IMG/VR virus record: IMGVR_UViG_3300007735_000804
Span: 124,001 to 188,000 of that record
Strand: one strand, 5' to 3'
Length of the DNA: 64,000 nucleotides
In this document: positions 33,587-35,596 of the stretch, piece by piece
Numbering within the stretch: position 1 is the first letter of the stretch
How the letters are laid out: every line of letters begins with the position of its first letter
Translations under genes and position numbers: made by a program
The notes under the pieces: model-generated
Told to the model about the DNA's origin: nothing
Seen by the model: the letters and a program-made list of their open reading frames with translations, nothing else
Database searches by the model: none

Positions 33587-33659
33587 TACCCGTGAGTGGA
33601 TTCGAACCACCGCTTGGAACATTTTAAGTGTTCTGCCTCTTCCGCTGGGCTACACGGGC
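33587..33659 (-). tRNA. tRNA-Leu(UAA), short variable arm
   Basis: GCCCGTG/CACGGGT-A acceptor, GAACA-CTTAAAA-TGTTC anticodon arm, GGTGG-TTCGAAT-CCACT T arm. Confidence 0.9.
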
Positions 33660-33736
33660 TGGTGGTCGCAGTGGGAATCTAACCCACCTTCGGCGGTTTA
33701 TGAGACCGCTGCATTCGAACAGATTGCTATACGACC
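33660..33736 (-). tRNA. tRNA with CAU anticodon (Met or Ile2), encoded CCA
   Basis: GGTCGTA/TGCGACC-A-CCA, GCGGT-CTCATAA-ACCGC, T loop TTAGATT. Confidence 0.85.
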
Positions 33737-33768
33737 TACATTCGCTATTCGCAAACAACGAATAGCAA

Positions 33769-33856
33769 TACGAGTGCCTGGATTCGAACCAGGTCAAAGC
33801 CGCTAATCTGGCGGAAAGAGTTTATAAGACTCCTCTGACTACCAAGTCTCACTCGC
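33769..33856 (-). tRNA. atypical tRNA with UAU anticodon (nominally Ile) and long variable arm
   Basis: GCGAGTG/CACTCGT-A, GGAGT-CTTATAA-ACTCT, CCGC/GCGG variable stem, CCTGG-TTCGAAT-CCAGG. Confidence 0.8.
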
Positions 33857-33866
33857 AATACAAATA

Positions 33867-34040
33867 CTACGGAGCTTCATTATTAAGCTCAGTATGTATT
33901 CGTATAAGGTCATCATCAAAGGGCATCATAACTGCTGCCTGTCCATCTTCATTGATAATACCTATGTGCTCGCCATTCTCTACACGAGTCATAAGTTCAT
34001 CCCATCGTTCCTGAAACTCTTCCACAGTGAAAACTTCCAT
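33867..34040 (-). CDS. Phd/YefM-like small protein (57 aa)
   Basis: Read by hand: MEVFTVEEFQERWDELMTRVENGEHIGIINEDGQAAVMMP... Confidence 0.6.
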   Translation of the reverse strand: MEVFTVEEFQERWDELMTRVENGEHIGIINEDGQAAVMMPFDDDLIRIHTELNNEAP

Positions 34041-34051
34041 GGTGTTGATAT

Positions 34052-34258
34052 TTAGTTGGACTCACCATACACGGCAAGATCAGCGTACTCAATTTGTTCG
34101 GGGTCAAGATTTGCGGTAACAACTTCCAGAACGTTCATAAACTCTTGAACGGTCTCACATTCAACCAGACGTTCACTACCTTGATCGCTCAATAGAAGGA
34201 AGGTGCGAGTGCAGACATCAATCACAATACCTTGAACGGTTTCTTGTGCGGTGCTCAT
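34052..34258 (-). CDS. conserved hypothetical protein
   Basis: ORF track; TTGACA-17-TATAAT promoter 34284-34312. Confidence 0.75.
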   Translation of the reverse strand: MSTAQETVQGIVIDVCTRTFLLLSDQGSERLVECETVQEFMNVLEVVTANLDPEQIEYADLAVYGESN

Positions 34259-34301: not shown

Positions 34302-34859
34302 TCAGGTGTCAAGTGGTTTTAAAAAATTCTCCAGAGGGCGATGGGCACCAAACATCCAAAGAATTCTGGGGATGTCTCCTTTTACTTCTGTAACATAATG
34401 TGGTTGCTCTGAAGCATAATAGCAGTGCAAATCTCCGACATTTATATCAATCAATTTTCCATCCACATATAAATTCCCACCACTTTCTGGTGCTTGCGTC
34501 ATTACATTGCATCTAAAAGTTGTCAGACCATCGGGTGATTTTGGATCTTGATGCTCATAAACATCACCTCCATTATATGTAACTGAAACAACAACTCCTT
34601 GGCTTCCGTGACCTAGAATTAAAGGATTATCTTGTAAATTCATAAATTTTCTAATTTTATCAGATATTTCGATTACATATAGTGGATATTTTTTACCTGC
34701 CATATGCATTCTACTTGTAAATCTTTTTTCATAAGCAAATTTACCTCTAGAAAGTCCAGGGGCAACCCAATGCTCTTTAATTCCTTGTAATGCAATATTA
34801 GATAATTTCTTACACTCTTCTTCAGTAAGAAAATTTCTAAAAATTTGAACCATATTCAA
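34302..34859 (-). CDS. 2OG-Fe(II) oxygenase (prolyl-hydroxylase-like)
   Basis: FLTEEEC, HQD...GG.L...H.V..V....R. Confidence 0.85.
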   Translation of the reverse strand: MNMVQIFRNFLTEEECKKLSNIALQGIKEHWVAPGLSRGKFAYEKRFTSRMHMAGKKYPLYVIEISDKIRKFMNLQDNPLILGHGSQGVVVSVTYNGGDVYEHQDPKSPDGLTTFRCNVMTQAPESGGNLYVDGKLIDINVGDLHCYYASEQPHYVTEVKGDIPRILWMFGAHRPLENFLKPLDT

Positions 34860-35596
34860 TAACCAAATCTTTCAAAATCCTTTTTATATAAATTTTTAAT
34901 TAATTCAATAGTAGTATCTGTTATATTTTTTTCTATTTTTTTAGATCCATTATGATGAGGATGTTCTCCCTTGATATTATAGTGCCCTCTTAAAAAATTA
35001 GAACATTCTTTAAGATTTTCAAGTTTAAAAATTTTTAATTTATTGTCGAGATTCACATCTAAAATATCATTCATTCCCAAAAACATTCTAGATGGATATT
35101 TTTCGGGTAATCCATTGGTAGCAAACTCTTTTACAAACTCATTAAAGTCTTTAATCTTGTATTCTTCTTCTTTTTTAGTCAAAGAAAATAATACAGATTC
35201 GTGATTAGAATTCGTACAATAATTCCAAATACTAAACAACCTATCAACAGGATTCCTTACGATTGAAAAAACTTTTTTACTGTCATGCTCAAAAATGTTC
35301 TTACAAAATCCTTGTCTAATTTCAGAAAGACGGTTGATAAAAAAGGTTTGCTCTCCAGAAATAAAATGAAGTAGTCCCCAATCATTTGAATCATCACTAG
35401 TTTTATATGTTGGGGGACATGTTACATAAGGTTGAAACCAGCAATCATCCGACTCATAATCTCTATAAGTAAACACCTTATCAGAAGTGCCGATAAAATG
35501 AGACATACTGATACTAGAAGATCTAGGTATGGGACAATACATCAACAGATCTTCATTCTCATCATTTAATTTTTGTTTTAGATCTTTTAGAATCAT
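34856..35596 (-). CDS. sulfotransferase family 2 protein
   Basis: 5'-PSB-like PIPRSSSIS, 3'-PB SIVRNPVDRLFS, C-terminal Y..DF..FGY. Confidence 0.8.
   Translation of the reverse strand: MILKDLKQKLNDENEDLLMYCPIPRSSSISMSHFIGTSDKVFTYRDYESDDCWFQPYVTCPPTYKTSDDSNDWGLLHFISGEQTFFINRLSEIRQGFCKNIFEHDSKKVFSIVRNPVDRLFSIWNYCTNSNHESVLFSLTKKEEEYKIKDFNEFVKEFATNGLPEKYPSRMFLGMNDILDVNLDNKLKIFKLENLKECSNFLRGHYNIKGEHPHHNGSKKIEKNITDTTIELIKNLYKKDFERFGY

What the first reader, a model, noticed from the sequence alone, without database searches (positions are those of the whole stretch)
33769..33856. UAU-anticodon tRNA with a non-canonical body (long variable arm, 4-nt D-loop)
Seen: GCGAGTG-A-GACT-TGGT-AGTC-A-GAGGAGT-CTTATAA-ACTCTTT-CCGC-CAGATTA-GCGG-CTTTGA-CCTGG-TTCGAAT-CCAGG-CACTCGT-A. 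It has one nucleotide between the acceptor and D stems (no U8), a 4-nt D-loop, an anticodon stem extendable to about 7 bp with G-U pairs, a long variable arm, A73 and A4-U69. Known: bacterial tRNA-Ile are short-arm with C4-G69, AUA is normally read by lysidine-CAU, and long arms mark Leu/Ser/Tyr/Sec tRNAs. Inference: a nuclease-evading AUA decoder, a mis-acylated tRNA that reads AUA as Leu or Ser, or a decoy.
Basis: partly seen in the sequence, partly recalled or inferred. Interest (0 to 1): 0.65.

Follow-up and report, generated by a model that had tools for sequence, protein, structure and literature searches.

The report
Phage AUA-reading tRNA with second anticodon-like arm
This cyanophage gene is a real but unannotated tRNA that reads the rare isoleucine codon AUA and carries, where a variable arm would sit, a second hairpin that copies the anticodon arm of ordinary isoleucine tRNA (GAU), a design shared by many phages and mobile bacterial tRNA clusters and possibly a way to be charged with isoleucine by any host.

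Summary
Window 33769-33856 (- strand) folds exactly as described. ARAGORN calls it tRNA(UAU); the Rfam tRNA model misses it. It is no oddity of one genome. The same gene sits in cyanophages S-SRM01, S-SKS1 and S-CRM01, unannotated in all three, in over 100 viral contigs, and in a Nostoc mobile island. Relatives with other bodies occur in long tRNA gene clusters of Acidobacteria and Proteobacteria. All five helices covary (95-99% paired; 0/500 shuffles reach the covariation score). The acceptor/T arrangement is 7/5 with A73, not Sec-like 8/5.

The new point is the long arm. It is a 3-5 bp hairpin with a 7-nt loop whose centre is always GAU, the anticodon of the major tRNA-Ile. It lies 5-6 nt before the T stem, as a normal anticodon arm does. 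In a scan that did not specify the arm, 47 of 52 clusters have it. Among other long-arm tRNAs about 2 of 310 do.

ATA codons of this phage sit at Ile-like positions, so Leu or Ser recoding is not supported. Metatranscriptome contigs cover the tRNA pair and not its flanks.

Best reading: an AUA decoder that needs no lysidine synthetase (TilS), charged by host isoleucyl-tRNA synthetase (IleRS) through a pseudo-anticodon arm. The charging step is inferred, not shown.

The parts
33769..33856 (-). tRNA(UAU), G1 to A73, 88 nt; CCA is not encoded
   Evidence: ARAGORN; covariance model R1 scores 103 bits over 33769-33856; covariation
33822..33828 (-). true anticodon loop CUUAUAA; anticodon UAU at 33824-33826
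   Evidence: the loop is invariant in the 14 window-type relatives
33800..33814 (-). pseudo-anticodon arm: 4-bp stem CCGC/GCGG and 7-nt loop CAGAUUA (33804-33810), with GAU at 33806-33808
   Evidence: GAU sits at the loop centre in 47/52 clusters from a scan that did not specify the arm; the 29'-41' position is C-G in 32/47; the stem is 100% paired and all 4 pairs covary
33794..33799 (-). 6-nt single-stranded link (CUUUGA) between the GAU hairpin and the T stem, the length of a class-I variable loop
   Evidence: the link is 5 nt in 57 and 6 nt in 22 of 82 clusters
33837..33849 (-). reduced D region: one linker A, a 4-bp D stem and the 4-nt loop UGGU
   Evidence: all 4 D-stem pairs show compensatory changes
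33744..33766 (-). hairpin (8-bp stem, 7-nt loop) in the 32-nt spacer between the UAU and CAU tRNAs
   Evidence: read from the sequence; the same 3' flank, TTGCTATTCG, recurs in many loci
33660..33736 (-). tRNA(CAU) with encoded CCA, the near-constant downstream partner of the UAU tRNA
   Evidence: ARAGORN and Rfam, 52.7 bits; linkage in most phage loci, often 1-5 nt apart
33587..33659 (-). tRNA(UAA), 73 nt, short variable loop; third member of the conserved trio
   Evidence: ARAGORN and Rfam, 56.6 bits; the trio is conserved in S-SRM01 and S-SKS1

Best explanation
This is a functional phage tRNA gene. It belongs to a widespread, so far unannotated family of UAU-anticodon tRNAs that read AUA. 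These tRNAs have two anticodon-type arms. The first arm is a canonical decoding arm (loop C/U-U-UAU-A-A) joined to the D stem by one nucleotide. The second arm sits where a variable arm would be. It is a 3-5 bp hairpin with a 7-nt loop Y-A-GAU-N-N, and 5-6 nt separate it from the T stem, as for a normal anticodon arm followed by a class-I variable loop.

The phage is AT-rich and uses ATA at 14 per 1000 codons. It makes this tRNA, co-transcribed with a CAU tRNA, to read AUA in a GC-rich Synechococcus-type host, where that codon and its tRNA are rare.

Inferred mechanism: the IleRS of bacteria that have TilS charges a plain UAU anticodon poorly. The GAU hairpin, with its C-G pair at the position equivalent to the C29-G41 Ile identity pair, would offer IleRS the G34-A35-U36 determinant in cis. 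The tRNA would then be charged with Ile, while the ribosome reads the UAU arm. A at loop position 2 (not U33) and mostly U at position 6 (not A37) would keep the mimic from decoding. AUA decoding would then need no host TilS and could move between hosts, which fits the family's presence on phages and mobile tRNA clusters.

Shown: the gene, its fold, the family, the invariant GAU loop, Ile-like ATA usage, and RNA-library coverage. Inferred: charging with Ile, and the role of the hairpin.
For: Structure and family:
- ARAGORN calls the gene.
- S-SKS1 shows compensatory changes.
- Covariation: 99.5% paired with 20/27 double-sided pairs on 14 sequences; 95.5% paired with 26/27 on 76 sequences; no shuffle of 500 reaches the observed pairing or covariation score.
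- Many members encode A73 followed by CCA.

The GAU hairpin:
- A scan for the UAU loop, a 26-40 nt spacer and the T loop, with the arm unspecified, gave 47/52 clusters with a hairpin of at least 3 bp and a 7-nt loop centred on GAU.
- The next commonest central triplet was seen 6 times.
- Some loops are CUGAUAA, the exact tRNA-Ile anticodon loop (L408), or CAGAUAA.
- The hairpin is found in 165/170 long UAU tRNAs and about 2/310 other long-arm tRNAs.
- The 29'-41' pair is C-G in 32/47; real tRNA-Ile(GAU) in the same loci has C-G in 20/32.
- The link to the T stem is 5-6 nt in 79/82.

Need for such a device:
- E. coli IleRS charges UAU inefficiently.
- The wobble-contacting Trp is conserved in tilS-bearing species (PMC3575796).
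- The phage encodes no IleRS-type or TilS-type protein.

Coding: ATA codons align to I 41/V 23/L 9, like ATT and ATC. ATA is used at 14 per 1000 codons in the phage, against 2.5 per 1000 in a Synechococcus host (PMC9964418).

Expression: metatranscriptome contigs (X15, depth about 270-540; also X17, X19) cover 33662-33857 and stop there. The flanking ORFs have depth 0-3.5.

Mobility: the tRNA is found in phages, in long bacterial tRNA gene clusters and in a Nostoc island with integrase and HNH genes. Of 151 cyanobacterial genomes, only that Nostoc has it.
Against: - No aminoacylation or decoding data exist.
- Geometry is a problem. A class-I synthetase such as IleRS approaches from the side away from a variable arm. 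The hairpin would have to lie beside the decoding arm, or the two arms would have to swap stacking on the D stem. Neither was modelled.
- The mimic usually lacks A37, and t6A37 helps E. coli IleRS.
- The C4-G69 Ile element is absent here (A4-U69).
- All 5 bacteria tested that carry such a tRNA also have TilS, so it does not replace the lysidine system.
- The adjacent CAU tRNA looks more like tRNA-Ile2 than tRNA-Met, so AUA decoding may be duplicated.
- RNA-library contigs cannot prove transcription, ends or strand. Conserved tRNA sequence shared by many phages could inflate their depth.
- The literature search was limited to the held library.
Confidence: 0.55

Rival explanations
1. It is an Ile-charged AUA decoder, but IleRS reads the true anticodon loop (A35, U36, A37, A38) and A73. 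The GAU hairpin does something else. It might brace a core weakened by the tiny D arm, recruit or block a U34 or other modification enzyme, limit AUG misreading, or act as bait or shield against a host nuclease or toxin that targets tRNA-Ile.
For: The true loop and A73 carry most of the Ile determinants other than position 34. The hairpin departs from a real Ile loop at positions 33 and 37. In the cyanophage clade the loop CAGAUU is complementary to AAUCUG in the D arm of the adjacent CAU tRNA: 39/66 adjacent CAU tRNAs show at least 5 nt of complementarity, against 26/1506 other tRNAs. That hints at an RNA-RNA role.
Against: The hairpin occurs with canonical D arms as well as reduced ones, so it is not a brace for one body type. 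Only GAU is invariant. It is tied to the one anticodon that Trp-type IleRS rejects. The complementarity to the CAU tRNA does not covary in the few other clades available. No conserved partner gene was seen beside it.
Confidence: 0.22
2. It is a mischarged class-II-like tRNA, loaded with Leu, Tyr or Ser, that inserts a non-Ile residue at AUA. Nematode nev-tRNA-Ile(UAU) takes Leu and bacterial allo-tRNAs take Ser in this way.
For: It has a long extra arm and A73, the discriminator of Leu and Tyr tRNAs. LeuRS and SerRS ignore the anticodon. Precedents exist: nev-tRNA (PMC3333845) and allo-tRNA, whose commonest anticodon is UAU (PMC5389517). Rfam's nearest model is tRNA-Sec.
Against: ATA codons sit at Ile/Val-type positions, not Leu or Ser positions. 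The arm has a sequence-conserved loop and a 5-6 nt 3' link, unlike Leu/Ser/Tyr arms. A73, not G73 or U73, argues against Ser identity. The phage keeps a normal long-arm tRNA-Leu(UAG) and two tRNA-Ser genes.
Confidence: 0.08
3. It is a tRNA-like RNA that does not take part in translation. It could be an IleRS sponge or regulator, a processing or stability element for the downstream CAU tRNA, or a target or leftover of HNH homing endonucleases.
For: It is tightly joined to the CAU tRNA, often 1-5 nt apart. HNH genes lie beside it in S-SRM01, S-CRM01 and Nostoc. Standard tRNA models miss it. By established knowledge, T4 also encodes tRNA-like stable RNAs of unknown function in its tRNA cluster.
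Against: The 7/5 acceptor-T geometry, A73, the CCA encoded in many members, the GG in the D loop and the T-loop consensus are all conserved. So is a perfect decoding loop with UAU in every member. That is hard to explain without decoding. In long bacterial tRNA gene clusters it occupies the slot of the AUA decoder among near-complete tRNA sets.
Confidence: 0.1

Closest known systems
tRNA-Ile(UAU) of bacteria without TilS (Mycoplasma mobile type, 'Ile3'; PMC3575796)
   Same: It has a UAU anticodon that reads AUA without lysidine. It faces the same two problems: IleRS recognition of U34 and AUG misreading.
   Different: Those tRNAs are ordinary class-I tRNAs, and there the synthetase changed (Trp to Arg). 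Here the tRNA carries an added GAU hairpin. The carriers tested keep TilS, and the gene rides on phages and mobile tRNA clusters.
allo-tRNAs (Mukai et al., PMC5389517)
   Same: Both are non-canonical bacterial or phage tRNAs picked up by the tRNA-Sec model. Both have a long extra arm, a short D loop and a long anticodon stem. UAU is the commonest allo-tRNA anticodon, and Acidobacteria are rich in both.
   Different: Allo-tRNAs are defined by 8/4 or 9/3 acceptor/T stems and mostly G73 or U73, with Ser or Ala identity. This tRNA is 7/5 with A73. The GAU loop is not described in that paper's main text. Some acidobacterial UAU tRNAs found here (L150 type) may overlap with that set; this was not checked.
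nematode nev-tRNA-Ile(UAU) (PMC3333845)
   Same: It combines a UAU anticodon with a long extra arm.
   Different: It is eukaryotic, has a tRNA-Leu body and is charged with Leu in vitro. No GAU loop is known for it. Here ATA usage is Ile-like.
bacterial tRNA-Sec (Rfam RF01852)
   Same: It shares the 4-nt D loop UGGU, the extended anticodon stem and the long extra arm. It is the best Rfam match, at 30.6 bits.
   Different: The match is below the gathering score of 47. The anticodon is not UCA. The stems are 7/5, not 8/5. The D stem is 4 bp, not 6. The discriminator is A73.
anticodon-arm mimics bound by synthetases (E. coli thrS operator, yeast AspRS mRNA; PMC9976931)
   Same: In these cases a hairpin that copies a cognate anticodon loop is bound by the matching synthetase.
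   Different: Those mimics lie in mRNAs and regulate translation. Here the mimic would lie inside a tRNA and act as an identity element.

Membership tests
canonical bacterial tRNA (Rfam RF00005) | scores at or above the gathering score of 29 bits | tested here: not met
   RF00005 is not reported at gathering. Under clan competition tRNA-Sec at 30.6 bits outscores it. tRNAscan-SE 2.0 missed the identical gene in S-SRM01 (PMC8557907).
canonical bacterial tRNA (Rfam RF00005) | 7-bp acceptor plus 5-bp T stem, T loop UUCGAAU, GG in the D loop, 7-nt anticodon loop with U33 and a purine at 37 | tested here: met
tRNA-Sec (RF01852) | gathering score of 47 bits; UCA anticodon; 8/5 (bacterial) acceptor/T stems; 6-bp D stem | tested here: not met
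   The score is 30.6 bits and the anticodon is UAU. Base -1 is not conserved, so there is no eighth pair. The D stem is 4 bp.
allo-tRNA (PMC5389517) | 12-bp acceptor branch split 8/4 or 9/3 | tested here: not met
   The 7 acceptor pairs and 5 T-stem pairs all covary.
allo-tRNA (PMC5389517) | discriminator G73 or U73 (Ser identity) | tested here: not met
   A73 is invariant in the 14 window-type relatives and is followed by CCA in many members.
tRNA-Ile(UAU) of TilS-less bacteria | UAU anticodon in a class-I tRNA-Ile body; the carrier lacks tilS | tested here: not met
   The anticodon criterion is met. However, the body has an extra arm, and 5/5 carrier genomes have TilS above the cut-off.
class-II tRNA (Leu/Ser/Tyr type) | a variable arm whose loop sequence is not conserved, joined to the T stem by 1-2 nt (established knowledge); codons of that amino acid | tested here: not met
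   The loop centre GAU is invariant, the link is 5-6 nt, and ATA positions are Ile-like.
UAU tRNA with GAU pseudo-anticodon arm (family proposed here) | UAU decoding loop; a second hairpin of at least 3 bp with a 7-nt loop centred on GAU; 5-6 nt to the T stem; A73 | tested here: met
   The window copy has loop CAGAUUA, a 4-bp stem, a 6-nt link and A73. The family is defined.
UAU tRNA with GAU pseudo-anticodon arm (family proposed here) | charged with isoleucine, with the GAU hairpin acting as an IleRS determinant | not testable with these tools
   This needs aminoacylation assays.

The most novel reading that the evidence does not exclude
A natural 'two-headed' tRNA in which identity and decoding are physically separated. 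IleRS reads a GAU pseudo-anticodon arm, while the ribosome reads a UAU arm on the same molecule. That would give phages and mobile tRNA clusters an AUA decoder that works in any host without lysidine synthetase. It would also give a natural blueprint for letting anticodon-reading synthetases charge tRNAs with arbitrary anticodons.
Probability: 0.4. Interest if true: 0.92.

Novelty: new variant of a known kind. Interest (0 to 1): 0.8.

Why it matters
- Annotation: standard tools miss a tRNA class present in hundreds of phage contigs and in several bacterial phyla. Phage tRNA inventories and codon-supply analyses therefore lack the AUA decoder.
- Mechanism: how a UAU anticodon can be used in bacteria whose IleRS rejects it is an open point in AUA decoding. 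A cis-acting anticodon mimic would be a third solution, beside lysidine and a changed IleRS. It can be tested directly with transcripts and purified enzymes.
- Principle: an identity element that is itself a copy of another anticodon arm would be new for tRNA recognition. It would also be useful for genetic-code engineering.
- Ecology: it fits AT-rich cyanophages that infect GC-rich hosts, and the spread of tRNA sets on mobile elements.

Tried and rejected
- The 8/5 tRNA-Sec-like reading (U-1:A73 pair): rejected. Base -1 is T or A about equally, and CCA follows A73 in many members.
- Allo-tRNA membership: rejected on 7/5 stems and A73.
- Leu/Ser recoding: not supported by the codon-position test.
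- Kissing between the V loop and the D arm of the neighbouring CAU tRNA: strong in the cyanophage clade, but no covariation elsewhere. Left as unexplained.
- Classifying the CAU tRNA as Met or Ile2: BLAST against E. coli found nothing. The acceptor-stem rules of PMC1635315 lean towards Ile2 but are not decisive.
- Named isolates for divergent family members (L450, L363, L390): none at E <= 1e-5.
- Supplement of the allo-tRNA paper, to compare sequences: not held.
- Ten literature searches found no description of a GAU loop in the extra arm of UAU tRNAs. This covers only the held open-access library.
- One call failed on a parameter slip and was redone correctly (then 70).

Full report
**What is there.** The window is part of a 213-kb T4-like cyanophage record (G000 C1 124001-188000). 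Its nearest named kin are Synechococcus phages S-SRM01 and S-SKS1. On the minus strand, between a tail-fibre gene and small ORFs, ARAGORN finds three adjacent tRNA genes:
- UAU at 33768-33857;
- CAU at 33660-33736;
- UAA at 33587-33659.

The minimum-free-energy fold is that cloverleaf. Rfam's general tRNA model does not reach its gathering score for it. The best Rfam match is tRNA-Sec at 30.6 bits, against a gathering score of 47. The rest of the genome holds ten ordinary tRNAs. These include tRNA-Ile(GAU), a long-arm tRNA-Leu(UAG) and two tRNA-Ser genes.

**It is a conserved gene with a proven fold.**
- The trio recurs in S-SRM01 and S-SKS1, and S-CRM01 has a diverged copy. None of the three records annotates it. 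The S-SRM01 paper, which used tRNAscan-SE 2.0, lists 11 tRNAs without it.
- The S-SKS1 copy differs by paired changes in the acceptor stem, the extra arm and the T stem.
- On 14 window-type sequences, 99.5% of cells pair and 20 of 27 pairs change on both sides. No shuffle of 500 reaches this, and slid controls give 37-50% pairing. All five helices are supported, including the 4-bp D stem and the 7-bp anticodon stem.
- A covariance model (R1) aligned 76 diverse relatives. Of these, 95.5% of cells pair and 26 of 27 pairs change on both sides; the covariation score is 0.88 against 0.19 for shuffles.
- The possible eighth acceptor pair (U-1:A73) is not conserved: base -1 is T in 57 loci and A in 54. 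Many relatives encode A73-CCA. The molecule is therefore 7/5 with A73, not Sec-like 8/5 and not allo-tRNA-like 8/4 or 9/3.

**The extra arm is an anticodon-arm mimic.** The arm's loop sequence stayed constant between otherwise diverged copies, so I scanned for it.
- A genome scan for the UAU loop plus a hairpin loop CMGAUUA found ARAGORN-callable UAU tRNAs in several groups. These were Acidobacteria (Pyrinomonadaceae, Bryobacterales, Terriglobia), Acidithiobacillus, Caulobacterales, Rhodospirillales, a Mollicutes genome, a Pseudobdellovibrionaceae genome and two Nostoc species. Most lie inside long tRNA gene clusters.
- That pattern presupposes the loop. I therefore repeated the scan in viral contigs with only the UAU loop, a 26-40 nt spacer and the T loop.
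- Of 52 sequence clusters of long UAU tRNAs, 47 have a hairpin of at least 3 bp with a 7-nt loop whose positions 3-5 are GAU. The next commonest central triplet occurs 6 times.
- The loop reads Y-A-GAU-(U>A)-(A>G). Variants include CAGAUAA, CUGAUUU and, in L408, CUGAUAA, the exact anticodon loop of tRNA-Ile(GAU).
- The stems differ freely, but the pair two steps from the closing pair is C-G in 32 of 47. Real tRNA-Ile(GAU) genes in the same loci have C29-G41 in 20 of 32.
- The hairpin is specific to UAU tRNAs: 165 of 170 long UAU tRNAs have it, against about 2 of 310 long-arm tRNAs with other anticodons.
- It lies 5 nt (57 clusters) or 6 nt (22 clusters) before the T stem in 79 of 82 clusters, the length of a class-I variable loop. 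Its distance from the decoding arm varies.
- From the 3' side the molecule thus looks like a normal tRNA-Ile(GAU) with an extra UAU arm inserted. From the 5' side it looks like a UAU tRNA with an odd variable arm.
- The bodies differ widely: reduced D arm here and in Nostoc, canonical D arms in many others. UAU, GAU and A73 stay constant.

**What it most likely does.** The decoding loop is textbook (C32, U33, UAU, A37, A38), so the tRNA should read AUA.
- ATA makes up 14 per 1000 codons in this phage. It makes up 2.5 per 1000 in an estuarine Synechococcus host.
- ATA codons align to I 41%, V 23%, L 9% in P-SSM2 homologues. This matches ATT and ATC, and differs from TTA (L 54%) and TCA (S 45%). 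The genome therefore treats ATA as Ile.
- Published work shows that E. coli IleRS charges a UAU anticodon inefficiently. The Trp that stacks on the wobble base is conserved in species with tilS, and a Trp-to-Arg change is what lets M. mobile use UAU. A plain UAU tRNA also reads AUG on E. coli ribosomes (PMC3575796).
- The phage encodes no IleRS-family or TilS-family protein.
- A GAU hairpin tied to exactly this anticodon, conserved across phyla with no conserved partner gene nearby, is most simply read as a cis-acting copy of the IleRS anticodon determinant. A in place of U33 and U in place of A37 would stop it from decoding.
- This step is an inference. The geometry is a real difficulty: IleRS binds away from the variable-arm side. 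It would need the hairpin to lie beside the decoding arm, or the two arms to exchange stacking.

**Expression.** Public metatranscriptome assemblies hold contigs that cover 33662-33857, which is the CAU and UAU tRNAs, and stop there. Depth is about 270-540 in run X15, while the flanking ORFs have depth 0-3.5. Two lake runs hold contigs identical to 33767-33856 with unrelated flanks. This suggests an abundant stable RNA. Contigs cannot prove transcription, ends or strand, and sequence shared among phages could inflate depth.

**Distribution and mobility.**
- All five bacterial carriers tested have TilS, so the tRNA is an accessory, not a replacement.
- Among 151 sampled cyanobacterial genomes only the Nostoc that seeded the search has it. 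The weaker hits are tRNA-Leu(UAA), one CAU-anticodon tRNA inside a tRNA cluster, and tRNA-Sec.
- In Nostoc it lies in an island with HNH, ParB-type, integrase and AbiEii-like genes.
- HNH endonuclease genes also flank it in S-SRM01 and S-CRM01.

**Comparison with known kinds.** It works like the TilS-independent tRNA-Ile(UAU) of M. mobile, but it solves recognition on the tRNA side. It resembles allo-tRNAs and tRNA-Sec in outline but fails their defining features. It shares anticodon and arm with nematode nev-tRNA-Ile(UAU), which takes Leu, but its codon usage argues against that. The nearest conceptual precedents are the anticodon-like hairpins in mRNAs that ThrRS and AspRS bind. Ten searches of the held literature found no description of the GAU arm. 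I therefore rate it a new variant of a known kind, with a more novel reading still open.

**Limits.** There are no biochemical data. The literature check covers open-access holdings only. The identity of the partner CAU tRNA is unresolved. Clusters were defined by shared 8-mers, not by a tree.

Noticed in passing
window 33587-33659 (-): The UAA-anticodon tRNA is only 73 nt, with a short variable loop, G1.U72 and A73, although bacterial tRNA-Leu normally has a long arm. Short-arm tRNAs with Leu anticodons are common in the phage loci and bacterial tRNA clusters collected here (UAA 45 short/51 long, CAA 35/9, UAG 29/33). TTA codons of the phage align to Leu.
   Followed up: partly
window 33660-33736 (-): The CAU tRNA encodes its CCA. 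Its T loop is UUAGAUU (A56) and its D loop lacks GG (CUGUUCG). Close relatives have UUCGAUC and CUGGUG. This looks like a G19:C56 to U19:A56 swap of the elbow pair. Its acceptor stem (U3-A70, C4-G69) leans towards tRNA-Ile2 rather than tRNA-Met, but this is unresolved.
   Followed up: partly
window 33804-33810 versus 33717-33727 (-); phage loci L004-L122: The V loop CAGAUU of the UAU tRNA is complementary to AAUCUG in the D arm of the adjacent CAU tRNA in the cyanophage clade. At least 5 nt of complementarity is seen in 39/66 adjacent CAU tRNAs, against 26/1506 other tRNAs. There is no covariation in the few other clades.
   Followed up: partly
window 33744-33766 (-): A perfect 8-bp hairpin with a 7-nt loop lies in the spacer between the UAU and CAU tRNAs. 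The same flank recurs in many related loci. It may be a processing signal.
   Followed up: no
window 33867-34040 (-), 34052-34258 (-), 34856-35596 (-): A small ORF just upstream of the tRNAs weakly matches the Phd/YefM antitoxin family (20.5 bits, below the cut-off); its S-SKS1 homologue is annotated as Phd-like antitoxin. Next to it lie a DUF7294 ORF and a sulfotransferase.
   Followed up: partly
L003 2365-3050 (S-CRM01); L001 5752-6171 (S-SRM01); L221 779-1225 (Nostoc): HNH endonuclease genes sit directly beside this tRNA in three unrelated contexts. S-CRM01 keeps a leftover second copy of the window-type GAU hairpin plus a T-arm-like stem downstream of its own UAU tRNA. This suggests turnover driven by homing endonucleases.
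   Followed up: partly
L435, L444, L452, L365, L377 and others; L354, L371, L372, L413: Viral contigs hold at least two further non-canonical classes of UAU-anticodon tRNA without a GAU hairpin. One has a GUAUCGG...CCGUA element around the anticodon arm. The other has a long GGCAAA...GUGCC extra arm.
   Followed up: no
L188 (Acidithiobacillus), L219 (Bryobacterales), L205 (Terriglobia), L209 (Pyrinomonadaceae): Long bacterial tRNA gene clusters of 25-38 genes carry the UAU tRNA with the GAU hairpin together with short-arm Leu-anticodon tRNAs. The non-standard tRNA designs seen in the phage trio therefore travel together in mobile tRNA sets.
   Followed up: partly
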